A stretch of 64,000 nt of DNA from Octopus sinensis. Its lineage: Eukaryota. Under the pieces are notes generated by a model that was not told the DNA's origin, searched no databases, and saw only the letters and a program-made list of their open reading frames with translations. The position numbers and the translations under genes were made by a program. The DNA lies in contig NC_043004.1 in the NCBI RefSeq assembly GCF_006345805.1, forward strand, positions 45,508,001 to 45,572,000. The letters are read 5' to 3'. How positions within the stretch are numbered: position 1 is the stretch's first letter; every line of letters starts with the position of its first letter. Shown here piece by piece: positions 2,471 through 60,647 of this stretch.

Positions 2471-2522
2471 TAGTAGTAGTAACGGCAGCAGCAGGAGTAA
2501 CAGCAGTAGAATTGATGACATG

Positions 2523-2877
2523 ACGGAAGTGCTACCTCCCACTGAATTTAGGAAACGATGGATAGCTGTGGGAAAATATGGTTAGTATGAATGGCCCTAC
2601 TCTAAGCATATACCTGTAGATTGGAGATCAGTTTGCAAAGGGCTCGTACCTTTGATGGTCAGGGTAGTGGTGGAGTGGATATGCAGGGTTTCTAGATTGG
2701 CCCTAGTTGGAGTTTCTCCTATACCAGGAGGACTGAATCATTCATGTTATCACATACTTTATATACTTATCTCACTTCACCGTCTTTTCTGTTTCCTTCA
2801 CCTAAGATCCCACACAAACTGTTGACTGTCAATGTGATGTCTCCCTCATCAATGACCTTGTGGCTGATAAAAGAAAT
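2523..2877 (+). mobile_element. L1/Tx1-like LINE 3' remnant (ORF2 C-terminus plus 3' UTR)
   Basis: TEVLPPTEFRKRWIAVGKYG aligns with the peptides at 11175 and 52180; ends CCTTGTGGCTGATAAAAGAAAT before an (ATT)n tract. Confidence 0.55.
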
Positions 2878-2904
2878 AATGATTATTATTATTATGATTA
2901 TTGA

Positions 2905-3120
2905 GGCGACGCACTGGCAGAATCGTTAGCACACCGGGTAAAATGCTTAGCGGATTTTCATCTGTATTCACGTTCTGAGTTCAAATTCTGCCGAGGTCAA
3001 TTTTTACCTTTCATCCTTTCGGGGTCGATAAAATAAGCACCAGGTAAACACCGGAGTCGATGTAATCGACTTACCCTCTCCCTCACAATTGTTGGCCTTG
3101 TGCCAAAATTTGAAATCATT
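2905..3120 (+). mobile_element. SINE S1, tail type A
   Basis: Same head and body as S1 but ends CCCTCTCCC..GGCCTTGTGCCAAAATTTGAAATCATT. Confidence 0.85.
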
Positions 3121-8290: not shown

Positions 8291-8435
8291 GATAATACAT
8301 CCTTACATAAAATCAGTACCAGTGAAACACTGGGGTAGACGTAATTGACTAGTCCCCTCCCCGAAAATTTCAGGCCTTGTGCCTTAGTAGAAAGGATTAT
8401 CATTATCATTATTAATATTATTATTATTAATTGCG

Positions 8436-8995: not shown

Positions 8996-9299
8996 TTAAT
9001 AGTATTAGCAGTGGTAGTCGTTGACAAAATAGTATAACAAGTAACTAGTCAACAAGCCACCTACTCTTATGGCGATATTTGTTTTGTTTTGCCAGCATGA
9101 AAAAAATTTTTTGCAAATTACTAGTACGACTACGATGTACAGTTTCGATTATTTATGGTTTCGGTTAAGAACTGCCAACACTAATTACTTTTAATATTAG
9201 ATCGATGACTTATGTTTGTTTTATTTACAATAATTTACATTAATTGTTATCACATCGAACACTGCTGATAGACAACCCGCCGTTTTCTTTTGGCTGAGA

Positions 9300-9760
9300 A
9301 AGGCAGACAAAATATTCCTTTGTCTGGTCGCTGTAGCAAAAGTGGTTATGTGGTAGACGAAGTTAAAAGAAATGAAAATTGATGTATTCCTCTTCGGTCA
9401 AGTCCTCATCAACTATTTTCAGTTTCACTTGGAACGGAATGTGGGAGTAGGGTCAGTGTCGCCTTAACGCATAGGCACACGGGGCAGTTGTCCGGGGTCG
9501 AACAGGTTCAGGAACCAGGTTCTGGTCTATGTATACTGTGACTTACTGTCAATAAATAATGTAGGCCCCCCAGTGCACTGATTTTCCCAGTGGCTTAATA
9601 ATGCTGCTGAGACTGCCCTGGGTAGATTGAGCCTTGCGGTGCTCTCCACCCCATTTCACCCAGAAAATTGTTTGAACAGTGGAGGAGAGTGGCAAATTTT
9701 GGCATGTGTAAATAAGCCTACTCTGAGGTTTTATGCCTGTAGGTAGAACAAACGCTGAAT
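9300..9760 (+). mobile_element. L1/Tx1-like ORF2 C-terminal remnant interrupted by a small hAT-like MITE (~9454-9620)
   Basis: IFLCLVAVAKVVMW*TKLKEMKIDVFLFGQVLINYFQFHLERNVGV matches the 11175 copy; insert starts CAGTGTCGCCTTAA and ends GAGACTGCCCTG (imperfect TIRs). Confidence 0.55.
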
Positions 9761-9798
9761 GAGGGCGCCAAACTTCGTGATCAGAGTTATATAGGTTT

Positions 9799-10027
9799 TT
9801 TTATTGCCCACAAGGGGCTAAACACAGAGAGGACAAACAAGGACAGACAAACGGATTAAGTCGATTATATCGACCCCAGTGCGTAACTGGTACTTAAATT
9901 ATCGACCCCTAAAGGATGAAAGGCAAAGTCGACCTCGGCGGAATTTGAACTCAGAACGTAACGGCAGACGAAATACGGCTACGCATTTCGCCCGGCGTGC
10001 TAACGTTTCTGCCAGCTCGCCGCCTTC
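9799..10027 (-). mobile_element. SINE S1, tail B
   Basis: Full-length copy; ~14-bp TSD AGTTATATAGGTTT (9785-9798, 10030-10043). Confidence 0.9.
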
Positions 10028-11133
10028 AAAGTTATATAGGTTTCGTAATGTTGTTTTGCGAGTAACCCTTAGTAAGGTCTCCTGCAATTGAGGATTTTGT
10101 TTTAGTGGGTTTTTTTTTTGTTTTCTTTTCTGTTACTCCATTATCTTTCTAAATTCCACCTCCGTGTTTATCCTTTTTTTCTGGTACTTTCCTTGTGCTG
10201 CCTTGTTTTCATTGAGTTCTTGTGGCTCAGAAGAGATCAGTGTTAGTTATCGTCATCATCATGACTCGGAGCTTTTTGAGAAAGGCTATAAATTTTGGTG
10301 ATTGAGTTGTCAGTATGATTATTATTGTGTTGGACCCGTCTGCTTTGTTATAATGTCGACTAATGATGATAGAAATAAGGCGTTCTAAGATAAGTTGAGG
10401 GCAACAAATTCCGGAAGGGAGTTGGGAGGAAATGGTTGATTAAGTTGACATACTATATGACTCGCACTATTTTATCGGTCCCAGGTTACACTAATGTTTT
10501 CCAATACAACTGTGATTTGAACACGAAGAGTAATAAACTTAGTAGAGAGAACAAAAGCAACAACGATAATGATGATAGTAATAGTCTCACATTTGGGCCT
10601 AAGGCCAGCACTTTTAGTGAGGAAGGATTTAGCCAGTTACATCAATCTCAGTACTTCATTGGTACTTTAATTTGTCGCCCCCGAAAGTATGAAGGACAAA
10701 GTCGACTGTGACGGGATTTGAACCTAGACCATAAAGAGCCGGAATAATAATTGCAGTCGGCACAACATCCATACTGCTACGTAAGTGACGACAAGATAAT
10801 GAGAATGAGGCACATTATCGACCTGTGAAAAAATTGCAAGAATCTTAGGCACATAAGAGCTTTATACTAGTAATAATTATGGGTAGGAGTTTAGTTGATT
10901 AATTTGACCGCACTACTTGACTGGTACTTTATTTTACTGTTAATGTTTCTTCTTGCTCGCCGCCTTAATAATAATAATAATAATATAATAATTAAAGCAC
11001 GATGACCCGCTGTTTTGAGAAGGCGGGCTCAGGCGATTAAATGGTCCCCAGCAATTTACTGGTATTTTATTTTAATGACGCTGGATGGATGGGAAGGAAA
11101 GCATTTCTCTTATCATCATCATCATCATCATCA

Positions 11134-11174
<41 letters not shown>

Positions 11175-11682
11175 GGTGGCTGTGGTGAAAGAGTTTGTTT
11201 AGTGAACAAGGCTGAAAGGCATAAGGACAAATACATTCCTCTTTGGTAGAGCTGTCATTCACTTTTTCAAGTTTCACTTGAAAAGGAAATTGGGAGTGGA
11301 GAGAGAAGTGCTGTCCTTGAGTGAGTTTATTGAAAGGTAGGTGAAAGCTACGAAAATGGCAAGAGTGGATGGTACCTCTCTAAGTGTAGACCTGTGAGTC
11401 GTAAAGAAGGAATTGGAGAGGGTATTTGCTATTGGGGTTTCAGGGAAATCTCGAAGCGTGGGATTCCTCGATTATCCCTAGAGGCCTTCCTGTATCAAGA
11501 GGGTCACATATCATCCTCCCCGCCACTTTTTTAACGTTTGTATGCTATGCATATATCTTTTTCAATGTATACCGTGTATACTTTTTTTATCATTTCATCA
11601 TATGTAAACCCCCAACGCGTTACGCCTGTCTTTGCATTGTCCCCCTCATCCCCATCCTTCGCCCTTGTGGCAAATAAATGAA

Positions 11683-11684
<2 letters not shown>
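11175..11684 (+). mobile_element. L1/Tx1-like LINE 3' remnant
   Basis: VAVVKEFV**TRLKGIRTNTFLFGRAVIHFFKFHLKRKLGVEREVLSLSEFIER*VKATKMARVDGTSLSVDL*, then a 3' UTR ending GCCCTTGTGGCAAATAAATGAAAT(TAT)n. Clade assignment is from memory of Tx1-type ORF2 C-termini. Confidence 0.65.
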
Positions 11685-11717
<33 letters not shown>

Positions 11718-11735
11718 CATCATTATTATTATTCA

Positions 11736-11897
11736 AGGCGGCGAGCTGGCACAATCGTTAGCACGCCTGGCAAAATGCTTAACGGCATTTCGACCGTCTT
11801 TACGTTCCGAGTTCAAATTCTGCCGAGGTCGACTTTGCCTTTCATCCTCTCGGAGTCGTTAAATTAAGTAACAGGGGAACACTGGGGTCGATATAAT
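11736..11897 (+). mobile_element. SINE S1 fragment truncated at an insertion
   Basis: Head and body to GGGGTCGATATAAT, then a mariner-derived insert. Confidence 0.8.
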
Positions 11898-12411
11898 ACT
11901 TAAGCCAAAACCATCCACAAAATTCAACAGGCTTTTGGCGATTGTACCATAGGTAAAACTCAGATCAAGGAGTGGTATAAAGTCTTCAAATACGGCTGCA
12001 CCTAGCACCAGTTTACAGTGATAAACTCGCGCGCGCACATGTATATGGCAGGTCGATATAATTTCAAACCTCGTGCCTCTAGTAAAAAGTATTAAGTATA
12101 ATAATAATAATAATGATAATGATAATCATTTCTTTATTTGCCGTAAGGGTGACTGAGAAGACATTAATAAATAACAACTTTAATAATAATAATAATATAA
12201 TAATAATAATAATAATAATGAAAGAAATGTCGCATTAGTTGCGTTGCATTTTAATAGTTATCAGGAAAGAACTAATTGTGGCTTCAAGACATTGAGATGT
12301 TTTGTACAGCTAGTCTTCAAAATTACTAAAGGTCAAAGTGAGTAACTACCGACCATTTTCTCTTTCTATATCTCGCCATATCTTTTTCTTTTACTCTCTA
12401 TCACAGACGTA

Positions 12412-13735: not shown

Positions 13736-13970
13736 AAGGCGGCGAGCTGGCAGAAACGTTAGCACGCCGGGCGAAATGCTTAGCGGTATTTCGTCTGTCG
13801 TTACGTTGTGAGTTCAAATTCCGCCGAGGTCTACTTTGCCTTTCATCCTTTCGGGGTCGATTAAATAAGTACCAGTTACGCACTGGGGTCGATATATAAT
13901 CGACTTAATCCGTTTGTCTGTCCTTGTTTATCTTCTCTGTGTTTAGCCCCTTGAGGGTAGTAAAGAAATA
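13736..13970 (+). mobile_element. SINE S1, tail B
   Basis: Full-length; perfect 16-bp TSD GGTTGTTAAAATCAAG (13720-13735, 13971-13986). Confidence 0.95.
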
Positions 13971-14189
13971 GGTTGTTAAAATCAAGGGAGATTGATGTCT
14001 ATATGGAACGAACAGCGGAAACGATAGTACCTCAAGATAGTGAGATACAAATGGGAACAGACACACTGTTTGAATACCAAAAAAAAAAGAGGGATTGTCA
14101 CATCTAGAGCTTTGTAGACAAGATTTATGTTAGTTGCATCATCGATGCTGACCTAAGGCTTGATAATAATAATCAAAAAGGATCAAAGG

Positions 14190-14400
14190 TCCTCTCTGAG
14201 TCATAGGTTCATAGGGCCTCTTTCTCTGTTTCTGTGGAGTATACGTTTCAACCGCCCCGGACAGGATGACTTTATTATTATAGGTTTACCCATTTTTGCC
14301 AGCTGGGTGAACTTGAGCAACATAAAAGGGAGTGTATTGCTCAACAACACAACGCATCGCTCGGTCTAGAAACCGAAACCATAATCTTACGACCAATGAA
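14190..14400 (-). mobile_element. Degenerate tRNA-SINE, family S4
   Basis: CAGCTGGGTGAACTTGAGCAAC..GTGTATTGCTCAACAACACAACGC shared with the 30460 copy. Confidence 0.55.
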
Positions 14401-14757: not shown

Positions 14758-15536
14758 TATATATATATATATATATTATATATTGGAGGGGTGAGGATAT
14801 AGTTATAGTCAAATATATTTATTCCGGTACTTCATTTTATCGACTCCTGGAGAATATAAGTCAAAGTTAATTTAGGTAGGATTTGTTCATACAAACATTA
14901 AATGGGGGAAATAAAATTTATTTTAAGATGGGATAGCCACGGTTGAAACGTACTTCACCATAGATCTCCACAACCAGAGCTGACCACCAGTTGAATTAAG
15001 TGAAAGCATAACCTGTCATTGTTCTAGGATACAACGATATACAATGAAGCACGCTATAATTATTCGACGTAAAGGTCAGCGCTGGAATATTTCAAACCAC
15101 AGGTATTGTAAATGCTTCAACACAACTCTTGATTCTCCATAGGCCTGCTTCAGTTTCTAGAATCTTCTATGTTTTCTCTGCGGGAGAACTACATAGCTAT
15201 CAAGGCACTAACATGATAGTTGTCTCCCTGCATCCATGTTCTTGTCGGCACAACAGTAGGTTGGTTGGATAAAGGTTAACGCGGATTTATAAACGACGAC
15301 GGTTATTTATAAGTCTTCTTGTGAAAAATAAGAGGAGCCCTCACACAATCTCTCATTTGCTCCGTCTTCTATAGATTTCTATCTGTAAGAAGTTATGATC
15401 TACCAAAAGAATACTAAATGTCTTCCAGGGTCCACTTTGCACTTTGGTGCTCTTAGGGGTCAGCTAATAAACTAAATACCAATCAAAATATTAGTCAATT
15501 CTATCGTCTTAAGATCCCGGCCTTGTAAAATATACC

Positions 15537-15770
15537 TATTTCTTTATTACCCACAAGGGGCTAAACATAGAGGGGGCAAACAAGGACAGACATAGGTATT
15601 AAGTCGATTACATCGACCCCAGTGCGTAGCTGGTACTTAATTTATCGACCCCGAAAGGATGAAAGGCAAAGTCAACCTCGGCGGAATTTGAACTCACAAC
15701 GTAACGACAAGCGAAATACCGTTAAGCATTTCGCCCGGCGTGCTAACGTTTCTGCCAGCTCTCCGCCTTT
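15537..15770 (-). mobile_element. SINE S1, tail B
   Basis: Full-length; flanking repeat TAAAATATACC on both sides. Confidence 0.9.
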
Positions 15771-26775: not shown

Positions 26776-27581
26776 CTTTTATACTCTAGCCACAAAACTC
26801 GAAATTTCGGGGGAGATGGGCAGTCGAATAGATCGACCCCAGTACGCAACTGGTACTTAATCTATTATCGACCCCGAAAAGATGAAAGGCGAAGTCGACC
26901 TCGGTGGGATTTGAACTTAGAACGTAAAGACAGATGAAATACCTATTTCTTTACTACCCACAAGGGGCTAAACACAGAGAGGACAGACTAACGGATTGAG
27001 TCGATTATATCGACCTCAGTGCGTAACTGGTACTTATTTAATTGACCCCGAAAGGATGACAGGCAAAGTAGACCTCGGCGGAATTTGAACTCAGAACGTA
27101 GCGGCAGACGAAATACCGCTAAGCATTTCGCCCGGTGTGCTAATGTTTCTGCTAGCACTCCGCTTTAACACAGTGAAAATATTCTTTTCTGCTCTAGGCA
27201 CAAGACCTGAAATTTTTGGTGAGGGGGCCAGTCGACTAGATAGACCCCAGAACGCAATTGGTACTTAATTTATCAACATCGAAAGAATAAAAGGCGAAGT
27301 CGACCTCGGCGGATTTTGAACTCAGAACGTAAAGACAGACGAAATACCTATTTCTTTACTACCCACAAGGGGCTAAACACAGAGAGGACAAACAAGGATA
27401 GACCAACGGATTAAGTCGATTATATCGACCTCAGTGCGTAACTGGTACTTATTTAATCGACCCCGGAAGGATGAAAGCCAAAGTCGACCTCGGCGGAATT
27501 TGAACCCAGAACGTAGCGGCAGACGAAATACCGCTAAGCATATCGCCCGGCGTGCTAACGTTTCTGCCAGCTCGCCGCCTT
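26776..27581 (-). mobile_element. Two tandem SINE S1 dimers (head-body-tailB-body-tailA)
   Basis: Junctions at ~26943 and ~27348; the whole block is flanked by 17-bp AAGATACTGAAAATATT (26759-26775, 27582-27598). Confidence 0.9.
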
Positions 27582-30770: not shown

Positions 30771-31374
30771 AGACATGCGCCTTCACCACATAAAACTATA
30801 TTGTGGTTGCCTAATTTAGAACACCACCAGTGACATATATTATTGAAATGGTCCATATCATATATAGGTTAAACAACGAAAAGACCCTGGTGTCAACAAA
30901 ATTCCTGAAAAAGATGTTAGAACATGGATCACAGCACAGACTGACCAGATTGCTTTGAAAGACAATGAGAAATTCGTATATCAGAGAGGGAAAGACGTAG
31001 TGTGCAGTTGAGAGTTGGCTTTGAGATCATCTGATCATATGTGATAAGGCAGAACATCATTGAAATATACAACTGATACCAGCTCATCTTTTATTCACAA
31101 TGGATCTAAGACTGTAATATCCTATGTGAAGTTTTTCAAGAGGGTAGAGTATCATTTTGAAGAGGTTTAGCTGTTGTTTCAAGCAACTCAAGTGATTACA
31201 TAGAACCTCCTTCACTGGTTTGAGGTTTATATATTAGTAAGAGACTGTGAGCGGTGATCGTAGATTTGGTTGTAGACCGAACCTAACTCATGTATATGGA
31301 ATTATTAGTAATATGAAATTAGCCATGGTTCTGTCTATGAAAACATCCACGATAGGTATGACGATAAATAATAA

Positions 31375-31773
31375 TCCTTTTCTGTTATAGACACAAGGCC
31401 TGGAATTTGTGGGGAGGGGGATAGCCGATTACATCGACCTCAGTACTCAACTGGTACTTAATTTATGAACCCCGAAAGCATGAAAGGCAAAGTCGACCTC
31501 GGCGGATTTTGAACTCAGAACATAGCGGCAGACGAAATACTTATTTCTTTACTACCCACAAGGGGATAAACACAGTGAGGACAAACAAGGACAGACAAAC
31601 GGATTAAGTCGATTACATCGAACCCAATGCGTAACTGGTACTTAATTTACCGACCCCGAAAGGGTGAAAGGCAAAGTCGACCTCGGCGGAATTTGAACTC
31701 AGAACGTAACGGCAGACGAAATACGGCTACGCATTTCGCCCGGCGTGCTAACGTTTCTGCCAGCTCGCGGCCT
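31375..31773 (-). mobile_element. SINE S1 dimer (tail B then tail A)
   Basis: Same architecture as the 26776 dimers; junction at ~31541. Confidence 0.9.
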
Positions 31774-34819: not shown

Positions 34820-35052
34820 AAGGCGGCGAGCTGGCAGAATCGTTAGCACGCCGGGCGAAATACTTAGCGGTATTTCGTCTGCCGTTACGTTCTGAGTTCA
34901 AATTCCGCCGAGGTCGACTTTGCCTTTCATCCTTTCGGGGTCGATAAATTAAGTACCAGTTACGCACTGGGGTCGATATAATCGAATTAATACCTATGTC
35001 TGTCCTTGTTTGTCCTCTCTATGTTTAGCCCCTTGTGAGTAATAAAGAAATA
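34820..35052 (+). mobile_element. SINE S1, tail B
   Basis: Full-length; 16-bp TSD GGTATATAACAGAAGT / GGTATATTACAGAAGT. Confidence 0.95.
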
Positions 35053-35392
35053 GGTATATTACAGAAGTATTGCAGATACCGAAAGAAGAAATTGAACTCA
35101 TCCATTCTCTTAGCTGAAGTACGAATGGCATAATAATCAGGCGCACTACCGCTACCGCCATACACCAGGTAAAAATATTCCACCCACATTATTGGAGCTC
35201 AAACATAAATTAACAAAAAATACAGGAATGATGACATCAGAAATAAATCGAGATGTCTAATCATAGAGTGCAAACAGAACAATAAAAAAGATAAAAATAT
35301 CTTAGTACAATGTATTTCCAAGTAACTAACAAATTAACAGTACATGTGTATATGTGTGTGTTCACGTGTGTGGGTGTATGTGTATGTGTATC

Positions 35393-36706: not shown

Positions 36707-37859
36707 ATGTATATATATATATATGCATGTATGTATATCTATATATGTATGTATATACATACATATATATATATATGTATATATATGTATACAAATATAT
36801 ACACATGTGTGTGTGTGTACATATAAATTTCATGTTAGGTGACAGTTATATGGTCAAGATTTTGCCACTATTCTTCAACATTTTTCAGGATTCTTCAGCA
36901 TCGTCCTTAAAATGGCTACCGGCTGTACGAGATTTTATCAGAAAGCGCGTTGCAACAAACCATCACCACTGGATAGTAATCCATTTAGATAAACATCCAC
37001 AACTATACACACAACAACAATAAATTTCTTACACCATACTGCACTTCCAAAATACATTTTCCTTTGTTTAAGAATATTTTTTCTACAGGGTTCTTCTAAC
37101 CGAATTATTGCTAACCGTCCAAAACATGCATCTTGCGTTTCAAAATATTTAGTTTTGCCCCTTTCAGGCAAAACAAACATTCACATTCAACATTTATTCT
37201 CATAAAATCACATACTGCTGGTAGTCTTCTTTAAACACGGATGGAGGAATGCTGGAAGAAGGTGACAGCGGTTTAAGCTACGCCAGATAGTTTTCTCATT
37301 ACAGGAAACATAAAGTAGTTTGCCTCAAATAAGATACTGTATATAAAACATTAATACCGCTCAAATGCATTCAGTGCTTTGTTTTGCTGAACCTAATATC
37401 ACACGAACAGTTCCATACACATATGTGCACGTGCGTGTATGTGTGTATGCGTACATAAATGCTTAAACTTATTGTACGTATGCATAAAAATATCTATATA
37501 ATTGTGTGTGTTTGTGTATCTGTATGTACGGAAGCATAACATAATTTTATATACACAGAGTTGTAATATATCTGTGTGTAAGTAGGTATTGATGTATATT
37601 TTTATATATGAGTGCATAAGACTATTCGTATGCAAAGAATAATATGTTGGCATATCAGAAAACGGTAGAATAGCTCAAGAATTCAGAAGTAAGCAATACA
37701 TATACAAAAGAAGGGGAAAAATAGCCTTGAAAATAAAACGAATTTATTATGTATAAAACAAACTCTATAGAACGGCAGGAACATATCTAGAGAATAAAGA
37801 AAGAGATAGAAAAAGAGAAGGAGAAGAAGAAAGAGATGATGGAAATGGATGAGGAGCAC

Positions 37860-38310
<451 letters not shown>

Positions 38311-38699
38311 AACGTCGATGATGACGACAATGGCGTCGAAGAGGTAGAGGTAAACACAAGAGAAGCAAAAGCATGAAAAACACGATGTAAGCGATTTGAG
38401 AAGAGAATAAGAGAATAAGAGAATAAGAGAATACGAGAATACTAGAAGTGAATTGATCAATAATTGAGAGAGGTGTACTGTTTTGGTTGAATGAATGAAT
38501 GAAAAGAAATGAATAAAGCTGCTAGAAAATGGTCGTATGCAATAATTTTAGGTAAGATGTTGATAATACCGCATTTGCTAGGAGAACTTTTATAGTTTCT
38601 GATCACCTGCCCGCGAAAAAAGGTAAAAAAAAAAAAAAAAAAAAAAAAAACGAAGATGTATGGCCGTGTGTATATTTGTAGATGGGTGTATGCGTGCAT

Positions 38700-38889: not shown

Positions 38890-39101
38890 ATATATATAAA
38901 AGCACACACACATACATACATACATACATACATGCATACATACATACATACATACACACACACATATATATACATATACGTATATATGAATATAATCTTG
39001 CACACACGCACACATATCTATATATATAATTATTTATATAAAAATGTGTATATGTATGGGTATATATTTATGCGCTTATAGGCGTGCGTGTGTATCTTTC
39101 A

Positions 39102-39158
<57 letters not shown>

Positions 39159-39162
39159 ACTA

Positions 39163-39233
<71 letters not shown>

Positions 39234-39294
39234 ATCTCTCTCTCTCTCTATCTATCTATCTATATATCTATCTATCTATCTATCTATCTAACTA

Positions 39295-39378
<84 letters not shown>

Positions 39379-39383
39379 ACTAT

Positions 39384-39452
<69 letters not shown>

Positions 39453-39456
39453 ACTA

Positions 39457-39491
<35 letters not shown>

Positions 39492-39494
39492 ATA

Positions 39495-39593
<99 letters not shown>

Positions 39594-40312
39594 GTGTGTG
39601 CGTGCGTGCGCGCTTGTGTATGTGAATGCGTATGTGTGTATGTGTATATGTATATATATGTAAAAAACATTGTATCTGCGACAAGGAAATATAAAGCTGC
39701 ACATGTACACATGCAACCATAACACACACATCCGTACACGTACTAATATACATACTTACGTACATATATAGATATATATATATATATACGCATGCAAATA
39801 TATACACTCACAAGCACACACATACACACATACAAACATACATGCACACATGCATACGTATATTATGTTTGTGGGCAAAAATTACGAAGGGAAATATAAA
39901 AGAAGCAGACTAATATAAAATATAGCGTATGGAAATAATTACACGAGATTTATTGCTGTAAGGTTAAAGATCGTGAAATTAGCATTCAGTCAAGTTACAT
40001 ACAAGCCTGGCCTAGCCATCATGGCGATTAAACGTGGCTTGGCGTTCGCAAAATCAAACAAGCAATATGTAAAACGATATTAAATGTTATCCGTGCGTTT
40101 CAGAAACAGGAACTGACGTCACGTATGTGTTGGTTACCCAAGATCGATTCAGCGTTAAGGCTAAATTGCTGCTAGGTGCGATAAACTGCCGAACGTGTGC
40201 AAATGCATGTGATGGCGGCGTGTGCACATGTGGCTGCATGTAAGTATATACGTATACACGCATACACATCAGTGTGTGTGTGTGTATGTAAGAATATATA
40301 TATATAATATAT

Positions 40313-43630: not shown

Positions 43631-44055
43631 ATATATCTATTTCTTTATTACCCACAAGGGGCTAAACATAGAGGGAACAAACAAGGACAGACATAGGTAT
43701 TAAGTCGATTACATCGACTCCAGTGCATAACTGGTAATTAATTTATTGACCCCGAAAGGATGAAATGCAAAGTCTACCTCGGCGGAATTTGAACTCACAA
43801 CGTAACGTCAGGTGAAATACCTATTTCTTTACTACCCACAAGGGGCTAAACACAGAGAGGACAAACAAGGACAGACAATCGGACTAAGTCGATTATATCG
43901 ACCCCAGTGCGTAACTGGTACTTAATTAAGCGACCCCGAAAGGATGAAAGGCAAAGTCGACCTCGGCGGAATTTGAACTCACAACGTAACGGCAGGCGAA
44001 ATACCGCTAAGCATTTCGTCCGACGTGCTAACGCTTCTGCCAGCTGGCCGCCTTC
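43631..44055 (-). mobile_element. SINE S1 dimer (tail B, tail B)
   Basis: Junction at ~43821. Confidence 0.9.
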
Positions 44056-49962: not shown

Positions 49963-51499
49963 CATACACACACACAGACACACGCACACACAGACACACA
50001 CTTATATATATGGAATACTTTCAGTTCGGATGCCTCTCATCTTGGATTTTCTGGATCTGACACTGGAGTAAGCAACAACAATAAATACAACATAAGATAT
50101 CTCATAGTACGCATTTGTTCTCAGTCAAAGAATAAAAAGGGAAATAGCAGATGGGGCCCCCTAAATTGAAAACACTAACATGCGGATGAAATCTTTAAGT
50201 AATTTTTCTCGCTCGTCACGGTAAGTTGTCACGCCAACTCAGACATTTTTTGTAGATCTGTATAGTGGTCATTTATCACCATGCTGAGAAGCACTAGAAA
50301 AAGCTTCGCTGAAGAGGACTGATAAACCTCAAACACGTCCACAGTTCCCTCGTGTTTGCTAACTATCAATTTAAATTAATATTACCCATCGAATATAATC
50401 AAAGAAAGTATTGATAAATTGAAAAGACAAATCACGATGAATTTCTAAACTATACTGGAGGGCAAAAAACCCCAAAAACTCCATGGTCAATATCCGGCAA
50501 GGCTGGAATGTGAAAGTAGCTTAGAATGAAACATAAGGGCTTAAAAGTCCTAGACTAGAAACAGAAATTAAATGCTTGATAAACGTTGCTGAAGACCAAT
50601 GGGTAGCTATTGCAAAAAAAAAATACTATATTAAAAGATAATAATATCTAGAGCAGGATATGCAGCCAGTACAGATGAGATGGCTTACTACATCTGCGAC
50701 TATCTTGTTCTTGCATGTCTGAATATTACCGCAGACACGATCGCGTAGAGATCTATGTACCAACTTTTCTATGTGAAGGTAAACAATATTTGGCATAAAT
50801 ATTTATATTAAACAAGGTATGCAAAAACGACCGAGTCACGGGAATTGCCAATCGAAGATAATACTCAAGAACCGGAGCAAAAAGCCATGCACGTTGGTAG
50901 AGATTGCAATCTTTTTCGATGAAGATAATGCATGAAAGGACGTTAAGAAAATGTTAAAATACTAAGATCTTGAAATTTGAATCAGCACGATGTAAGCAAT
51001 GAAGGTTAAAATACTAGCGATTATCACCATCGTTCAATGTAATAACATAGTTCAGAAGATACAGTCTCTGCACACGACACATACACTGCAAGAATAACCA
51101 CCCAATAACATAACTCAAACCTCACAATACATATTATACACGGTTATCACTTAACAAATATGACAGAAACTACATTCCACTCCAACATAAACAATACCTA
51201 AAATTATAAGTTTGGAACATTTGCCCCTCATGGACAATAACCTCCCAAGGACGATTACCCCTGAGGACAACAGATGATTTAAAACTTCTTAATATATTGG
51301 AAAGAGGGTAATTAACTATGGAGAGTAATTGTCCGAGAGGGTAGTTGTCGTTGGGGGAAATTGTCCTATGAGGTTGTGGTGGAATTGTCCTGATACGAAA
51401 ATTATATCGCTAACAACTCATATAGTTTTTATTCTACGCAGCGGCAAGCTATTAATGCTAGACAAACTACATGCCACATACTACACGCAATAATCCTTT

Positions 51500-51622
51500 C
51501 TGAAAAAAGTTTTGGGGAGGTGGGGGATAGTCGATTACATCGACCCCAGTACTTGACTGGTACTTAATTTATCGAGCCCCCGAAAGGATGCAAGGCAATG
51601 TCGACCTCGGTGGAATTTGAAA
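51500..51622 (-). mobile_element. SINE S1 tail-A fragment
   Basis: Body and tail-A match. Confidence 0.75.
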
Positions 51623-51837
51623 TAATATACACAATAATGATCAGACACTGAAACACATAGCGCTAAACACTCACACAACGCATACAAAACATTTATTAAC
51701 CAAGCAAATAATAACACGACAGGCATCTCACATACTTTAATCAACAGAGGAGACAGAAAACTATCATGAGAAGTAAAGCAAATAATAATCGCTCGTGAGT
51801 GATGAATAATTTAGTTAAGTAAAACTGATATAGATAG

Positions 51838-52310
51838 ATTTCTTTATTTCGCCACGCAGGGCTAAACACAGAAGGGACAAAATACAAAGTAGAGCTTTTC
51901 TTTTTGGGAAGAAGAGAAAGGGAGAAAAAACGGGGGTGAATTCCGATCAAAAGGGATCGTGGGGACAAGGAAATAAAACAAAATGGGGCCGATCAATAGG
52001 GATCGTGTATCACAGTAATGTCAATGTAAAAAGTGAGAACAGATAAGGTTTGCCGTGGATAGAAAAGCCTACGGAAAAGACCACGGAAACCTTGGGCAAT
52101 AGTGTCATGCAAAAAGAAAATACATTACAGTAAGTGGTTCTCTTTTTTCCTTTCGTTTTTCTTTTTTTTTTCTTTTGATTCATAGGACTATGCTCAAACT
52201 GGCCCCGTCATTCACACGTGCCATCCTTGCTACATTCACCCATCATTTTTCGAAGCATTCACTAGACAAAACTTCCCTCACTGCACTCACCTTCCTCAGA
52301 CTTGCGCACG
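51838..52310 (-). mobile_element. L1/Tx1-like LINE 3' remnant with an S1-like tail
   Basis: SLRKVSAVREVLSSECFEK*WVNVARMARVNDGASLSIVL* (stop 52180-52182); 3' UTR ends TTGTCCCTTCTGTGTTTAGCCCTGCGTGGCGAAATAAAGAAAT. Confidence 0.75.
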
Positions 52311-52320
52311 TATTGTAACC

Positions 52321-52650
52321 GCGAAGGCGCGTTGCTTAGTGGTTAGGGTACTCGGCTGACGATCTTAAGTTCATGAGTTCGATTCCCCGGCAGCGCGTTG
52401 TGTCCCTGAGGAAGGAAGACACAGTATTTCTCGTTGCTTCAGTCCACTCAGCTGGCAAAAATGAGTAGCGCCTTTATTGCAAAGGGTCAACCTTATATTC
52501 TGTGTCACGCTTAATCTCCCCGAGAAGTACGTTAAATCGTATCTGTGGCTGGATCAGCTTTATATAGGCGTACGATAATTTCACTAGCAGGCTGTTCCGT
52601 TGATCGGATTAACTGGAATACACTGCGTCGTCGTAACCGACACAGAGCCA
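52321..52650 (+). mobile_element. tRNA-SINE family S5
   Basis: GGCGCGTTGCTTAGTGGTTAG..GAGTTCGATTCCC head; 11-bp flanking repeat GTATTGTAACC (52310-52320, 52651-52661). Confidence 0.8.
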
Positions 52651-52660
52651 GTATTGTAAC

Positions 52661-52882
52661 CTGGCAGAAACGTTAGCACGCCGGGCGAAATGCGTAGCTG
52701 TATTTCGTCTGTCGTTACGCTGTGAGTTCAAATTCCGCCGAGGTCGACTTTGCCTTTCATCCTTTCGGGGTCGATAAATTAAGTACCAGTTACGCACTGG
52801 GGTCGATGTAATCGACTTAATCCCTTTGTCTGTCCTTGTTTGTCCCATCTATGTTTATCCCCCTGTGGATAATAAAGAAATA
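52661..52882 (+). mobile_element. SINE S1, tail B, slightly 5'-truncated
   Basis: Direct match. Confidence 0.9.
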
Positions 52883-53509
52883 AGTAGCGTAACCTGTTGT
52901 TGAAGTACTAACATTGGCTTCCCTCACCAAAAACAGAAGGTTACACACGCTTTAAGAAGACGGGTGTGCGCTTGGTGATGCTGTAGAAACTCGCATGAAA
53001 CCATCAAAAGAAACAATACCAGCAGTAAATATGTGAATTTGACGGTGTATATGTGGCTTTAATAGTAAATAACGTCTCGCTCTCTATCTGAGATGAAGCC
53101 ACTGGCCAAACAAGTATAATTCATGAATTAAATATGTATGTACGTATCCTAATATAGAATGACGATAATAAAAGCAGTTCTCAACGTCTCTATTATATAA
53201 TTATCCTTTCTTGAAATACAAATATTTAACGTGTGGGATTTTCTTTCCTTTTATTGTTTTTGTTTCTGCTGTAAGGTTTTATTCCTCTGTTATTGTTAAT
53301 TTATTTTAGGCTCCATTTTCTTTACATGAATACATATTACAGATGAAAGAGAACCTCTACAATGGCCGTTTTTAATATTTGCTTCATATTGCGCGCTCAC
53401 CAACCCCGGCTCTAAAACCTGATTAGTCACTATTGGACTTGAATTCTGTTTGATAAAAAAGCACAGTTTTGTCTTACAATTATTATGAGTCTTTGCTTAA
53501 TAATGACAA

Positions 53510-53656
53510 TTGGATTGTTGTCGTTGTTGTTGCTGCTGCTGTTATAGAAGTAGTAGTAGTAGTAGTAGTGGTGGTGCTGGTGCTGGCGGAGGTAGTAGTA
53601 GTAGTAGTAGTATTAGTAGTAGTAGTAATGGTGGTGCTGGTGCTGGTGGTGGCGGA

Positions 53657-53693
<37 letters not shown>

Positions 53694-53756
53694 GTAGTAG
53701 TAGTAGTAGTAGCGGAGGTAGTAGAAGTAGTAGTAGTAGTAGTAGTGGTGGTGGTG

Positions 53757-53798
<42 letters not shown>

Positions 53799-53945
53799 AT
53801 AGTAGGAGTAGTAGTGGTGGTGGTGGTGCTGGTGGTGGTGGTGGTGGTGGTGGTGGAAGTAGTAGTAGTGGTAGTAGTGGTAGTAGTAGTGGTAGTAGTA
53901 CTACTAGTAGTAGTAGTAGTAGTAGTAGTTCTTGTTGTTGCTGTT
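53510..53945. repeat. (GTA)n/(GGT)n compound trinucleotide tract
   Basis: Direct reading; source of the poly-V/T/S ORFs. Confidence 0.95.
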
Positions 53946-54096
53946 AATGTCGCTAAGGCGGCAAGCTGCTGACTGAATCGTTGCCGCTCCAGACAAAATT
54001 CATTACTTCCAGTTCTTTTCGTCCTGAGTTCGCATGCCGTCAAATTCAAATTTGTTTCTCATTCTTTCAGCGTCGATAAAATAAGTAACAGTCAAG

Positions 54097-54906: not shown

Positions 54907-55450
54907 TGCGGCGAGCTGGCAGAATCGTTAGCACACCGGGCGAAATGCTTAGCGGTATTTCGTCTGTCTTTACGTTGTGAGTTCAAATTCCGCCGAGGTC
55001 GACTTTGCCTTTCATCCTTTCGGAGTCGATAAATTAAGTATCTGTTGCGCACTGGGGTCGATGTCCTCGACTTAATACCTATGTCTGTCCTTGTTTGTCT
55101 CCTCTATGTTTAGCCCCTTGTGGGTAATAAAGAAATAGGTATTTCGTCTGTCTTTATGTTCTGAGTTCAAATTCCGCCGAGGTCGACTTTGCCTTTCATC
55201 CTCACGCACTGGAGTCGATATAATCGACTTAATCCGTTTGTCTGTCCTTGTTTGTCCTCTCTGTGTTTAGCCCCTTGTGGGCAGTAAAGAAATAGGTATT
55301 TCATCTGTCCCTACGTTCTGCATTCAAATTCCACTGAGGTTGACTTTGCCGTTCATCCTATCGGAGTCGATAAATTAAGTACCAGTTGCGTACTGGGGTC
55401 TATGTAATCGACTAGTCACCTTCCCCAAATTGTGCCTATAGTAGAAAGGA
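54907..55450 (+). mobile_element. SINE S1 trimer (B, B with internal deletion, A)
   Basis: Junctions at 55138 and 55295. Confidence 0.9.
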
Positions 55451-58516: not shown

Positions 58517-58644
58517 CAATATGTGACCGCGTGTATATCGTTGGCGATGTTCTTTCTCCGTCTTCTCTTCTTTGGACTTTTTTCTTTTTTTCTATATTTG
58601 TGACGAAGAGCTGTTTCTTTCTTTCCTATTGACTGCATGTTGGA

Positions 58645-59306
58645 TTACTCTCGCTCTCGGTACGTTTTGGGGACACGGCAAGCCAACAGTTGTTTCTTGT
58701 CTGAGAAAAACCAAGGCATGTTCGGTTGGAGGGAATGCTTCAGTTTGTTCAAAAGCATCGTAACGCGGACTTTCGTCTTGTCCTCGATGACTTGGGGATA
58801 AAAATCGGTCTTTTCGCATCTTGTATGAGGAATACCGAATTCCTCGATGCACTGCCTGCCTGATAAAGAACTCAGACACTCCCATGTCCCTGACGATGGA
58901 CCTGACTGACTTGGAGGATTCATTGTCAATCATGGCCTGGATATCACCAACAAATTTAGGAGTACTTTTCTTATAAGAACGATCAGAGTGAGTTTTCGGA
59001 GGTACCGTACCTTCATAATCACAATTAGACTCATCCAACTGTTTCCGAATTCTCTGCACTGTCCTCAGATTGACACCCAAACACTCTGAAGTGTTAGCTT
59101 TTGGAGCCTCCGGCACGAATGCCAAGTAGTACAGCATGTCGTTTCCAAATTTCAGGCAGAGTGAATTGCGTCATGGTGCTGTTGTTCTCAGAGACAGGGC
59201 TCAACAGACCCTACAATACTGTGTAGTTGACAAAATCAAAAAAGAAACACTGCGCATGCGCGAAATAAAAAATATAAAATGACGATGATTTATCCATCGC
59301 ACTCTG
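58645..59306 (-). pseudogene. Tc1/mariner-superfamily (maT/DD37D-like) transposon 5' remnant
   Basis: TA|CAGAGTGCGATGGATAAATC terminus; TPKFVGDIQAMIDNESSKSVRSIVRDMGVSEFFIRQAVH..YKMRK and, after a frameshift, LLNKLKHSLQPNMPWFFSDKK (first catalytic D); then deleted. Confidence 0.8.
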
Positions 59307-59448: not shown

Positions 59449-60084
59449 TATATTATATATATAACATATATACATATATACTGGCACACACATAGATACA
59501 TAAATAAATAAATACGCACACACATATACATACATAAAATATACATTTATATTCTACACTCCAGATACAGTCTGTATTTCTAGCAGACACGTAACACATG
59601 TTTAAGACCGCTTAATGTCTCACCAACGCTAGTATAAAGAGAATTGGAAATGTTTTTATTTTCACATAAATTGAAAATACAGAAATAACGAAAATGTCAA
59701 CAATGCAAACATTTTCGAGCTGTTATGCAAATTACTGTATAAAAGTACACGAAATTTCGAAATTAACATTAAAATTAGATCTAAATATTCGCCTAGTGAA
59801 ATGACTTGTTACGGTAATTTTATGGACGAATGTCTCATAGTGAGGTCGGGGGAAAAAAAAAAAACGTTAAATCTAATTTCAATGTCGATTTGAAAAGTTC
59901 AAACTCTCTTGGAAAGTTGTTAGGATAAACAATTGCAGATAGCTTTAGGGCTAGTGAAGTTAGTGATGTTGCAGCTATTTCTATACACCTACAACTTTTT
60001 AATGTCTTTTAATGTTATTTTTTGCTTCCGGGTTGAGTAGGAGACACAGTATGCTAAGCACATTGTTACAATATTGATTACGGT

Positions 60085-60647
60085 GAAGTGCTTAACGTAT
60101 TTCGTCTGCTGTTATGTTCTGGGATCAAAAACATCCGAGATCGACATTGCCTTTCATCCTTTCGGGGTCGATTAAATAAGTACCAGTTACGCACTGGGGT
60201 CGATGTAATCGACTTAATCCCTTTGTCTGTCCTTGTTTGTACCCTCTATGTTTAGCCCCCTGTGGGTAGTAAGGAAATAGGTATTTCGTCTGCCGCTGCG
60301 TTCTGAGTTCAAGTTACGCCGAGGTCGACTTTGCCTTACATCCTTTGGGGTCGATTAAATAGTACCAGGTAGCACTGGGATCGATGTAATCGACTTAATC
60401 CGTTTGTCTGTCCTTGTTTGTCCCCTCTATGTTTAGCCCCCTGTGGGAAGTAAGGAAATAGGTATTTCGTCTGCCGCTGCGTTCTGAGTTCAAGTTACGC
60501 CGAGGTCGACTTTGCCTTACATCCTTTTGGGGTCGATTAAATAAGTACCAGGTACGCACTGGGATCGATGTAATCGACTTAATCCGTTTATCTGTCCTTG
60601 TTTGTCCCCTCTATGTTTAGCCCCCTGTGGGCAATAAAGAAATAAAT
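60085..60647 (+). mobile_element. SINE S1 trimer (B, B, B)
   Basis: Junctions at 60280 and 60461; units 2 and 3 share private variants. Confidence 0.9.

What the first reader, a model, noticed from the sequence alone, without database searches (positions are those of the whole stretch)
51838..52310. SINE S1 tail B derives from an L1/Tx1-like LINE 3' UTR: a SINE-LINE partnership visible in one window
Seen: the LINE remnant ends TTGTCCCTTCTGTGTTTAGCCCTGCGTGGCGAAATAAAGAAAT, and S1 tail B ends TTGTCCTCTCTGTGTTTAGCCCCTTGTGGGTAATAAAGAAAT. Older LINE copies (2877, 11684) end in related tails. S1-B copies have 14-16-bp TSDs. Established: many SINEs borrow the 3' end of their partner LINE, and Tx1-clade endonucleases are often target-specific (tRNA/snRNA genes, repeats, other transposons). 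Inference: a Tx1-driven SINE whose target preference explains the self-nested multimers, a rarely reported pairing. The Tx1 assignment is from memory of the C-terminal peptide.
Basis: partly seen in the sequence, partly recalled or inferred. Interest (0 to 1): 0.7.

Follow-up and report, generated by a model that had tools for sequence, protein, structure and literature searches.

The report
Octopus SINE borrows LINE 3' tail
An abundant short mobile element (SINE) in this octopus-like genome ends in the same roughly 45-60 bases as a Tx1/L1-type LINE, so that LINE family is probably what copies it; this is an ordinary kind of SINE-LINE partnership, but I found no published description of it for octopus.

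Summary
Window 51838-52310 (-) is a 5'-truncated LINE copy. It holds the last ~43 codons of ORF2, a stop at 52182-52180, a 342-nt 3' UTR and a 43-nt terminal tail. That tail is 84% identical to the end of the S1-B SINE, and both stop at ...AATAAAGAAAT.

The tail belongs to the LINE and is not a stray SINE fragment. All five LINE copies in the window carry a homologous tail. So do four copies elsewhere: three in the octopod Argonauta hians and one on a JGI metagenome contig. In all of them the tail lies downstream of an ORF2 with endonuclease, RT and zf-RVT domains.

SINE and LINE tails co-vary between the window and Argonauta. A small hairpin with a CUUGU loop keeps its pairing through compensatory changes.

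The LINE belongs to the L1 group. Its RT is closer to Xenopus Tx1L than to human L1, but the tree backbone is unresolved, so "Tx1" is likely rather than proven.

S1-B inserts at dispersed sites with a short GGT(A/T)T preference, not into a specific repeat. The tandem multimers fit insertion at S1's own GGTAT (position 49), but neighbouring units share private mutations, so local duplication also occurred.

Verdict: a new member of a known kind, of moderate interest.

The parts
51838..51880 (-). LINE copy D: 43-nt 3'-terminal tail shared with S1-B. It includes the GCC/CUGCGU/GGC hairpin and the AAAUAAAGAAAU end.
51881..52179 (-). LINE copy D: body of the 3' UTR. It is collinear with the 3' UTRs of other copies of the family, apart from an A-rich insertion.
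   Evidence: alignment with B, A, L001, L002, L003
52180..52310 (-). LINE copy D: remnant of the ORF2 C-terminus (...REVLSSECFEK*WVNVARMARVNDGASLSIVL). Terminal stop TGA at 52182-52180. One internal TGA at 52245-52243 where relatives have Trp. The 5' boundary is uncertain by about 20 nt.
52661..52883 (+). S1-B SINE copy, 5'-truncated at consensus position 11, head-to-head with LINE D. Possible TSD GTA(TT/GC)GTAACCTG.
52321..52651 (+). Unrelated second SINE (S2) inserted between LINE D and the S1-B copy, with a perfect 10-bp TSD GTATTGTAAC (52311-52320 and 52652-52661).
11176..11684 (+). LINE copy B: last 73 codons of ORF2 (62% identical to P0001), 3' UTR and tail ...GCCCTTGTGGCAAATAAATGAAAT. 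It is flanked by (ATT)n on both sides.
2515..2877 (+). LINE copy A: decayed ORF2 end, 3' UTR and tail ...GACCTTGTGGCTGATAAAAGAAAT, followed by ATT-type repeats and then the 5' end of an S1-A copy.
9297..10237 (+). LINE copy E: ORF2 C-terminus at 9297-9449 (55% identical to P0001). It is split by an S1-B insertion at 9796-10025 (-) with a 15-bp TSD, and its tail ...TTCTTGTGGCTCAGAAGAGAT ends at 10237.
12128..12165 (-). LINE copy C: tail only, ...CACCCTTACGGCAAATAAAGAAAT, followed by (ATT)n-type repeats.
13737..13971 (+). Example of a solo full-length S1-B copy with a 16-bp TSD GGTTGTTAAAATCAAG. Other solo copies: 170-399(-), 1436-1667(+), 9796-10025(-), 15536-15768(-), 34821-35053(+).
26822..27580 (-). 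Example of S1 tandem arrays of the form [1-233 tail B][49-167 + tail A2], present here twice. The junction is GAAATA|GGTATTTCG. Other arrays: 8438-9000(+), 31365-31773(-), 43637-44053(-), 54908-55440(+), 60082-60644(+).
2904..3117 (+). Example of an older S1-A copy with tail A1 (...TTGGCCTTGTGCCAAAATTTGAAAT + CATTATT). Tail A2 (...AGGCCTTGTGCCTAGAGTAGAAAAGGATTATT) occurs at 8307-8400 and in the last units of the arrays. Both are variants of the same LINE-type tail.

Best explanation
Window 51838-52310(-) is a dead, 5'-truncated copy of a LINE of the L1 group, most likely Tx1-like. Its full-length form, seen in Argonauta hians, has three parts:
- ORF1 with a CCHC knuckle;
- ORF2 with APE endonuclease, reverse transcriptase and zf-RVT domains;
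- a 270-340-nt 3' UTR ending in a conserved tail, ...(U)CUGUGU..GCC-CUUGU-GGC.AAUAAAGAAAU, often followed by (AUU)n.

The S1 SINE family carries variants of this tail. Tail B is the variant closest to copy D.

Inferred mechanism: the LINE's ORF2 protein recognises this 3' end ('stringent' recognition), probably through the small CUUGU-loop hairpin plus the A-rich terminus. It therefore reverse-transcribes S1 RNA in trans by target-primed reverse transcription. Staggered nicks give the 15-16-bp TSDs. Priming is helped by a few bases of microhomology (GGUAU/UAU) at the very 3' end.

S1 contains GGTAT at its own position 49, so S1 copies are themselves good targets. The 15 bases of identity between the new cDNA and the target let the 5' end join seamlessly, giving head-to-tail arrays with a 184-bp period. 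These arrays are later also amplified by local duplication.

Shown: the tail homology, its position at the LINE terminus, the LINE's domain architecture, SINE/LINE co-variation between two octopods, stem covariation, and the TSD and target statistics.

Inferred: trans-mobilisation, the hairpin as recognition element, and the way the arrays form.
For: 1. D and the S1-B consensus match 36/43 at the extreme 3' end, both terminating in AATAAAGAAAT.

2. A three-frame query made from the window's LINE fragments hit one protein, P0001 (RVT_1 + zf-RVT). Its C-terminus ...FKFHLERKVRVEREVLSSSKFNERWVRVASMARVNGTTLSMHL matches copies B, D and E.

3. Independent loci carry the same order: ORF2, then UTR, then tail.
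- L003 ends ...GCCCTTGTGGCCAATAAAAGAAAT + (ATT)n.
- Argonauta L002 carries two tails.
- Argonauta L008 ends ...CCCCTCTATGTTTTTGCCCTTGTGGCTAATAAAAGAAAT + (ATT)n, nearly the same as S1-B copies reading CCCCTCTATGTTTAGCCCCTTGTGGGTAATAAAGAAAT.
- All five window copies have the tail.

4. Co-variation between the window and Argonauta. In the window, both S1-B and LINE D read TGTGTTTAGCCC. In Argonauta, both the SINEs and LINE copy L002b read TGTGT(T)CGGCCC and are followed by CTAT.

5. Hairpin. The stems are GCC:GGC (LINE), CCC:GGG (S1-B) and GGC:GCC (S1-A and the L005 LINE). 72.6% of cells are paired against 58.6% in shuffles, and the covariation score is 0.327 against 0.135 (0/500 shuffles reach it). 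RNAalifold predicts the same three pairs, two of them with compensatory changes.

6. Autonomy. L002 has ORF1 (476 aa, CCHC) and an ORF2 that aligns to residues 1-1144 of the full-length relative P0006, with Exo_endo_phos at its N-terminus.

7. Clade.
- P0001 against human L1 ORF2p gives E=3e-50; against R2, 4e-24.
- RT-segment scores: P0001-Tx1L 244 bits, P0001-L1 167, Tx1L-L1 154.
- Distances: 1.35 to Tx1L and 1.82 to L1.
- A profile of the family retrieves YTX2_XENLA at 1019 bits.
- Mollusc RT phylogenies report Tx1 as the L1-group clade (PMC11203168, PMC10294476).
- O. vulgaris has 80 L1-Tx1 families, with 421 insertions listed as recently active (PMC13282606).

8. Target. 3 of 6 solo TSDs start with GGT(A/T)T (p about 2e-5, a post hoc figure). 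All 10 internal array junctions read GAAATA|GGTATTTCG or GAAATA|AGTATTTCG.
Against: - No experiment shows mobilisation.
- Only one LINE copy with the exact S1-B-type motif (TTTAGCCC) was seen in the window's own genome, and it is dead. No intact copy from the same species was recovered.
- The hairpin is only 3-5 bp (consensus energy -1.85 kcal/mol). Its covariation comes from about three lineage-level changes, and I drew the structure from these same sequences.
- The Tx1 placement has weak bootstrap support (11-32% on the backbone), and only one L1 anchor (human) was available.
- Adjacent array units share private substitutions, so not every unit is an independent insertion.
- ARAGORN and Rfam do not recognise a tRNA in the S1 head.
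Confidence: 0.8

Rival explanations
1. The last 43 nt of 51838-52310(-) are a severely 5'-truncated S1-B insertion that happens to abut an unrelated sequence or LINE UTR. On this reading the LINE itself has no such tail.
For: Similarity to S1-B is confined to the terminal ~44 nt. S1 is extremely dense in this window, with about 36 hits.
Against: Nine LINE copies from the window and other loci all end in a homologous tail at the same distance downstream of ORF2 (A, B, C, D, E, L002a, L002b, L003, L008). The UTRs align up to the tail. D also shares bases upstream of the S1-like part with Argonauta copy L002b (CT[C/G]TACTTTGT), and S1-B lacks these.
Confidence: 0.03
2. The tail similarity is a relic. 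S1-B is now mobilised by a different LINE, for example the RTE or CR1 families abundant in octopus, or the tail passed from SINE to LINE.
For: RTE, Dong-R4 and CR1 are the most abundant octopus LINEs (PMC13282606 supplement). RTE-type elements also end in microsatellites (PMC9115989). No activity data were obtained here.
Against: The tail is conserved across LINE lineages that are only about 43% identical in protein (L005) and across two octopod genera, so it is ancestral in the LINE. SINE and LINE tails co-vary between the window and Argonauta, which points to continuing dependence. The described octopus RTE-2_OV has a 3' UTR that is mostly microsatellite starting at the ORF end (PMC9115989), unlike this tail. 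The 15-16-bp TSDs and the A/T-rich sites suit an L1-type APE nick.
Confidence: 0.1
3. The multimers are not produced by insertion preference at all. They are dimeric or trimeric master SINEs, or plain tandem duplications by unequal crossing-over.
For: Units 2 and 3 of array 60082-60644 share many private substitutions, as do units of 8438-8949. The dimer at 27580-27230 is repeated together with its TSD-like flank at 27163-26822.
Against: Every junction falls exactly between the SINE's 3' end and position 49 (GGTAT), the same motif that starts 3 of 6 solo TSDs. The last units carry older A-type tails while upstream units carry tail B. That pattern is what insertion of B into a resident A element predicts.
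Confidence: 0.3

Closest known systems
Stringent-type SINE/LINE pairs sharing a 3' tail (Ohshima et al. 1996; eel UnaSINE1/UnaL2, Kajikawa & Okada 2002; survey of 58 pairs in Ohshima 2012, PMC3472496)
   Same: A SINE with a Pol III-type head and a unique body carries the last ~45-60 nt of a LINE's 3' UTR. The shared end contains a small stem-loop and is followed by a short repeat. No poly(A) tail is present.
   Different: The partner here is an L1-group (Tx1-like) LINE. The 2012 survey found only a maize/sorghum pair and a Chlamydomonas pair in the L1 clade. The host is a cephalopod. Nothing has been tested experimentally.
Tx1 clade LINEs (Xenopus Tx1L, Keno, Kibi, Koshi, Mutsu; crocodilian Tx1-Mar mobilising SINEU, Kojima 2015, PMC4494074)
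   Same: APE-RT ORF2, with the RT closer to Tx1L than to human L1. A SINE depends on it. Some copies lie in microsatellites: copy B sits inside (ATT)n, as Kibi and Koshi sit in (TC)n and (TTC)n. A related family (L005) forms head-to-tail arrays.
   Different: SINEU was tied to Tx1 by shared target, not by a shared tail. Here the link is a shared tail, and the SINE is dispersed rather than targeted to one repeat. ORF2 is about 1150 aa and its C-terminal region aligns poorly with Tx1L (1308 aa). Clade placement is weakly supported.
Described octopus SINEs OK, OR1, OR2 (Ohshima & Okada 1994) and the RepeatMasker classes tRNA-Deu / tRNA-CORE reported for octopus
   Same: Abundant tRNA-type SINEs of octopus.
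   Different: In the 2026 O. vulgaris annotation, 250 of 328 Mb of SINE sequence is 'unclassified'.

Membership tests
SINE-LINE 3'-tail partnership (stringent type) | SINE and LINE share sequence at their extreme 3' ends | tested here: met
   36/43 identical for D against the S1-B consensus, with the same terminus. The L008 LINE tail aligns with S1-B over about 45 nt.
SINE-LINE 3'-tail partnership (stringent type) | The shared segment is an integral, conserved part of the LINE, present in most copies | tested here: met
   9 of 9 LINE 3' ends examined carry it: 5 in the window, 3 in Argonauta hians and 1 on a JGI metagenome contig.
SINE-LINE 3'-tail partnership (stringent type) | The partner LINE is autonomous (endonuclease + RT) | tested here: met
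   Argonauta locus L002 has ORF1 and an ORF2 with Exo_endo_phos, RVT_1 and zf-RVT. No intact copy from the window's own genome was recovered.
SINE-LINE 3'-tail partnership (stringent type) | A conserved 3' stem-loop acting as recognition element | tested here: inconclusive
   A 3-5-bp stem with a CUUGU loop shows compensatory changes. It is energetically weak and rests on few independent changes.
SINE-LINE 3'-tail partnership (stringent type) | The LINE machinery mobilises the SINE in trans | not testable with these tools
   Needs a retrotransposition assay.
L1 group of non-LTR retrotransposons | N-terminal APE-type endonuclease, an RT most similar to L1-type RTs, and a C-terminal Cys/His (zf-RVT) motif | tested here: met
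   Pfam finds PF03372, PF00078 and PF13966. Human L1 ORF2p is the best PDB match: 3e-50 against 4e-24 for R2.
Tx1 clade | The RT groups with Xenopus Tx1L rather than with L1 in a phylogeny | tested here: inconclusive
   Closer to Tx1L than to human L1: 244 against 167 bits, and distance 1.35 against 1.82. It is nested with Tx1L when rooted on human L1, but the backbone bootstrap is 11-32% and there is a single L1 anchor.
Tx1 clade | Target-specific insertion (common in the clade, not universal) | tested here: not met
   S1-B copies lie at dispersed unique sites. Only a short GGT(A/T)T/TAT preference is seen. LINE copy B lies inside (ATT)n, but that is a single case.
tRNA-derived SINE | Head recognisable as a tRNA with internal Pol III A and B boxes | tested here: inconclusive
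   A B-box-like GAGTTCAAATTCC is visible, but ARAGORN finds no tRNA in the window and Rfam gives no tRNA hit in 51400-53000.
Octopus SINEs OK / OR1 / OR2 | Sequence identity to the published consensus sequences | not testable with these tools
The papers held mention these SINEs only by name.

The most novel reading that the evidence does not exclude
The main octopod SINE family has been driven for a long time by one stringent-type Tx1-like LINE lineage. That LINE recognises a CUUGU hairpin plus an A-rich terminus. The SINE has replaced or co-evolved its tail at least three times (A1, A2, B) to follow LINE subfamily turnover. Microhomology-primed insertion at the SINE's own GGTAT site makes it self-targeting, which produces the tandem SINE arrays typical of octopus genomes.
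Probability: 0.45. Interest if true: 0.55.

Novelty: new member of a known kind. Interest (0 to 1): 0.4.

Why it matters
SINEs make up about 12% of octopus genomes, and roughly three quarters of that sequence is 'unclassified' in the newest O. vulgaris annotation (PMC13282606). The octopod-specific SINE expansion is repeatedly discussed in connection with cephalopod genome and brain evolution.

Naming the autonomous partner of a major SINE family turns an unclassified repeat into a testable system. It shows which LINE subfamilies must be active for the SINE to move, and which RNA element is recognised. It would also add one of the few stringent-type SINE/LINE pairs known in the L1/Tx1 group, and I found none reported from an animal. 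That bears on whether sequence-specific 3'-end recognition is ancestral in that group (Ohshima 2012).

It is not a new principle.

Tried and rejected
- Reading the region for an ORF by eye and with the ORF listing found nothing, because of decayed Trp codons. A three-frame pseudo-protein search solved this.
- A scan of metagenome contigs with the ORF2 C-terminal alignment found no relatives.
- Source names of relatives were uninformative: 'hypothetical' or none. Only a profile search finally retrieved the named Tx1L protein.
- A Biopython bootstrap timed out and was replaced by a numpy NJ.
- ARAGORN and Rfam did not detect a tRNA in the SINE heads. The one Rfam match, Plasmodium RNase P at E=0.44, is noise.
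- RTE-2_OV, the published octopus brain LINE, was considered as partner and rejected. Its 3' UTR is mostly microsatellite beginning at the ORF end.
- The idea that LINE D continues beyond the S1/S2 insertions (52884 onward) was tested by reconstruction and tblastx and got no support.
- Albertin 2015 was not available to read.

Full report
**What is in the window.**
The window is AT-rich, microsatellite-rich eukaryotic DNA. It is packed with one SINE family, called S1 here as in the finding. BLASTN with the S1-B consensus gives 36 hits in 64 kb.

Full-length S1-B is about 232 nt:
- It starts AGGCGGCGAGCTGGCAGAAACGTTAGCAC.
- It has a B-box-like GAGTTCAAATTCC.
- It ends ...TTGTCCTCTCTGTGTTTAGCCCCTTGTGGGTA(A/G)TAAAGAAAT(A), with no poly(A).

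Solo copies have TSDs of 11-18 bp, mostly 15-16. ARAGORN and Rfam do not call a tRNA in the heads, so 'tRNA-derived' rests on motif resemblance only.

**The observation.**
The minus strand of 51838-51880 reads TTGTCCCTTCTGTGTTTAGCCCTGCGTGGCGAAATAAAGAAAT, exactly as quoted. Against the window, 51838-52310(-) matches S1-B copies only over its last 44 nt, at 79-84% identity. Against the S1-B consensus the match is 36/43. A degenerate tail pattern occurs 19 times where shuffles give 0.

**Is the segment a LINE?**
No long ORF is visible. However, copies ending at 2877 (A) and 11684 (B), copy E (9297-9795 plus 10041-10237) and D share a block that reads like a protein end, with 'stops' at conserved places.

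A three-frame pseudo-protein of these fragments hit a single database protein, P0001 (912 aa). Pfam finds RVT_1 at residues 285-528 and zf-RVT at 747-799. Its C-terminus...FLCLVAMAKEVVWWTRLKGLKTDTFLSGHALTDFFKFHLERKVRVEREVLSSSKFNERWVRVASMARVNGTTLSMHL, matches B, D and E. The conserved 'stops' are decayed TGG codons.

tblastn confirms the matches:

| copy | P0001 residues | identity | E-value |
|---|---|---|---|
| B | 840-912 | 62% | 3e-19 |
| E | 830-880 | 55% | 3e-12 |
| D | 850-912 | 45% | 8e-5 |

D therefore consists of three parts:
- the last ~43 codons of ORF2, with one internal TGA at 52245-52243 and the true stop at 52182-52180;
- a 342-nt 3' UTR;
- the tail.

**Is the tail the LINE's own?**
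Yes. All five window copies end in a homologous tail:

| copy | tail |
|---|---|
| A | ...GACCTTGTGGCTGATAAAAGAAAT |
| B | ...GCCCTTGTGGCAAATAAATGAAAT |
| C | ...CACCCTTACGGCAAATAAAGAAAT |
| D | as quoted above |
| E | ...TTCTTGTGGCTCAGAAGAGAT |

A, B and C are followed by ATT-type repeats.

Close relatives of P0001 were fetched with their DNA.
- A JGI metagenome contig (L003; protein 85% identical) has the ORF2 stop, a 270-nt UTR, and ...GCCCTTGTGGCCAATAAAAGAAAT followed by a long (ATT)n.
- Argonauta hians locus L002 (protein 64-68% identical) has ...TTCTGTGTCAGCCAGGTGGCTAAGAAAGAAAT, and a second partial copy ending ...TTCTGTGTCGGCCCTTGTGGCTAATAAAGAAAT.
- Argonauta locus L008 has ORF2, then ...CGTCCCCTCTATGTTTTTGCCCTTGTGGCTAATAAAAGAAAT followed by ATT repeats. 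This nearly equals S1-B copies that read CCCCTCTATGTTTAGCCCCTTGTGGGTAATAAAGAAAT.

The UTRs align from the stop codon to the tail. This excludes the rival reading that D merely abuts a truncated SINE.

**Evidence for a continuing partnership.**
Argonauta carries S1-like SINEs, and their tails co-vary with the LINE tails of the same genome.
- Argonauta SINEs and LINE copy L002b read ...TCTGTGT(T)CGGCCCTTGTGGCTAATA(G/A)AGAAAT and are followed by CTAT.
- In the window, both S1-B and LINE D read ...TCTGTGTTTAGCCC....

S1 also has older tails, A1 (...TTGGCCTTGTGCCAAAATTTGAAAT + CATTATT) and A2 (...AGGCCTTGTGCCTAGAGTAGAAAAGGATTATT). Both are variants of the same motif. A LINE family only 43% identical in protein (P0006, locus L005, organism unknown) has ...TTAGGCCTTGTGCCAAATTTG... 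near its 3' end. The tail is therefore old in the LINE lineage, and the SINE has followed it several times.

**A candidate recognition structure.**
Around an almost invariant CTTGT, the flanking triplets stay complementary while changing:
- GCC/GGC in the LINE copies;
- CCC/GGG in S1-B;
- GGC/GCC in S1-A and L005.

On a 25-sequence alignment, 72.6% of cells pair, against 58.6% in shuffles. The covariation score is 0.327 against 0.135, reached by 0 of 500 shuffles, and slid registers are much worse. RNAalifold independently predicts the three inner pairs, two with compensatory changes, but at only -1.85 kcal/mol. This resembles the stem-loops of stringent-type LINE 3' ends. It remains suggestive, because there are few independent changes and I chose the structure from these same sequences.

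**What kind of LINE.**
Argonauta L002 holds a nearly full element:
- ORF1 of 476 aa with a CCHC knuckle (weak zf-CCHC hit, no Transposase_22);
- an ORF2 that aligns to residues 1-1144 of the full-length relative P0006, with Exo_endo_phos at the N-terminus.

The best solved-structure match is human L1 ORF2p. P0001 gives 3e-50 against 4e-24 for R2, and P0006 gives 9e-69 against 5e-16.

A profile of 40 family representatives retrieved the SwissProt Tx1L ORF2 (YTX2_XENLA) at 1019 bits. Over a ~460-aa RT segment the scores and distances are:

| pair | bits | distance |
|---|---|---|
| octopod LINE - Tx1L | 244 | 1.35 |
| octopod LINE - human L1 | 167 | 1.82 |
| Tx1L - human L1 | 154 | 1.89 |

Rooted on human L1, the octopod LINE and Tx1L both sit inside one radiation. 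The backbone bootstrap is only 11-32%, and I had a single L1 anchor.

The literature adds indirect support. Mollusc RT phylogenies report Tx1 as the L1-group clade (PMC11203168, PMC10294476). O. vulgaris has 56 Mb of L1-Tx1 against 11 Mb of L1, with 421 L1-Tx1 insertions listed as recently active (PMC13282606).

I rate 'L1 group' as established and 'Tx1 clade' as likely, at about 0.65-0.7.

**Target choice and multimers.**
S1-B copies lie at dispersed unique sites, so there is no Tx1-style repeat specificity. Three of six solo TSDs begin with GGT(A/T)T (p about 2e-5, a post hoc figure), and others begin with CTATAT or ATAC. In Argonauta every SINE and the LINE copy L002b are followed by CTAT. 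This fits a few bases of microhomology between the RNA's extreme 3' end, a remnant of the (AUU/UAU)n repeat, and the nicked target.

S1 itself has GGTAT at position 49. All ten internal junctions of the seven arrays are GAAATA|GGTATTTCG (or AGTATTTCG). The arrays have the form [1-233 B][49-233 B]n[49-167 + older A tail, or a B tail].

A textbook nested insertion would leave a duplicated S1 head upstream, and none is seen. Two models give the observed junction: insertion at position 49 with the 15-nt TSD region serving as homology for 5' joining, or template switching between S1 RNAs at GGUAU.

Adjacent units also share private substitutions, and one dimer is repeated together with its flank. 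Local duplication has therefore also enlarged the arrays.

**Comparison and novelty.**
This is the classic SINE-LINE common-tail relationship. What is unusual is the partner clade. Ohshima's survey of 58 pairs found stringent pairs in the L1 clade only in maize/sorghum and Chlamydomonas (PMC3472496). The SINEU-Tx1 link was based on shared targets (PMC4494074). The papers I could search do not describe an octopus SINE-LINE tail pair. Most octopus SINE sequence is still 'unclassified' (PMC13282606). I could not consult Repbase, Dfam or SINEBase, so prior cataloguing cannot be excluded.

**Verdict.**
A new member of a known kind.

Noticed in passing
window 52321-52651 (+), TSDs at 52311-52320 and 52652-52661: A second, unrelated SINE (S2). 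It has a tRNA-like head (TTAGTGGTTAGGG ... GAGTTCGATTCCC) and a core containing GTCCACTCAGCTGGCAAAAATGAGTA. It is inserted with a perfect 10-bp TSD GTATTGTAAC exactly between LINE D and the S1-B copy. Apart from one 35-nt partial match (14287-14321, 86%), it has no other copy in the window.
   Followed up: partly
window 2878-2904 and 11685-11736; also 11120-11175: LINE copies A and B are each followed by ATT-type repeats and then by the exact 5' end of an older S1-A copy. Copy B has (ATT)n on both sides. This suggests that (ATT)n tails of earlier insertions are preferred landing sites for the (AUU)n-tailed LINE and SINE subfamilies.
   Followed up: partly
window 26822-27580 (-): An S1 dimer (tail B unit plus A2 unit) occurs twice in tandem. 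The TSD-like flank AATATTTTCA(G/C)T(A/G)T(C/G)TT is present three times, which indicates duplication of the dimer together with its target-site duplication.
   Followed up: partly
window 60082-60644 (+) and 8438-8949 (+): Neighbouring units of S1 arrays share private substitutions (for example GCCGCTGCG and CAAGTTACGCC in units 2 and 3). These arrays therefore grew at least partly by local duplication rather than by independent insertions.
   Followed up: partly
window 58592-59137 (-) and 11907-12000 (+): A 181-aa ORF resembles the N-terminal DNA-binding part of a Tc1/mariner transposase. A second mariner-like fragment (...AFGDCTIGKTQIKEWYKVFK...) interrupts the S1-A copy at 11736-11906.
   Followed up: no
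window 8050-8409 (-): A 119-aa ORF ending ...KILWDAIIQCDHLTRHRKPDFDVVNKKERTCILIGIARPGDNSIKENEKNRT. From memory it resembles the C-terminal region of another retroelement family common in invertebrates. It lies next to S1 copies.
   Followed up: no
L005/L006 (ENA ERZ21867824, contig ctg122906l): The related LINE family P0006 (43% identical; 385 cluster members) lies in head-to-tail tandem copies 6596 bp apart. Each copy has a 546-aa CCHC ORF1, a 146-aa ORF and a 1153-aa ORF2. The organism is unknown, the GC content is about 50%, and no S1 is present.
   Followed up: partly
L002 9620-11309 and L008 138-10229 (Argonauta hians): S1-like SINEs are dense in Argonauta too and all end ...GGCCCTTGTGGCTAATAGAGAAAT followed by CTAT. 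The SINE family and its LINE-type tail therefore predate the split between Argonauta and the window's lineage.
   Followed up: partly
window 37765-38460, 39044-39722, 53469-54049 and many others: Very long microsatellite and low-complexity tracts, including poly-T/A, (TATC)n-like and (GTT/GTG)n-like runs. They produce most of the long spurious ORFs in the window.
   Followed up: no
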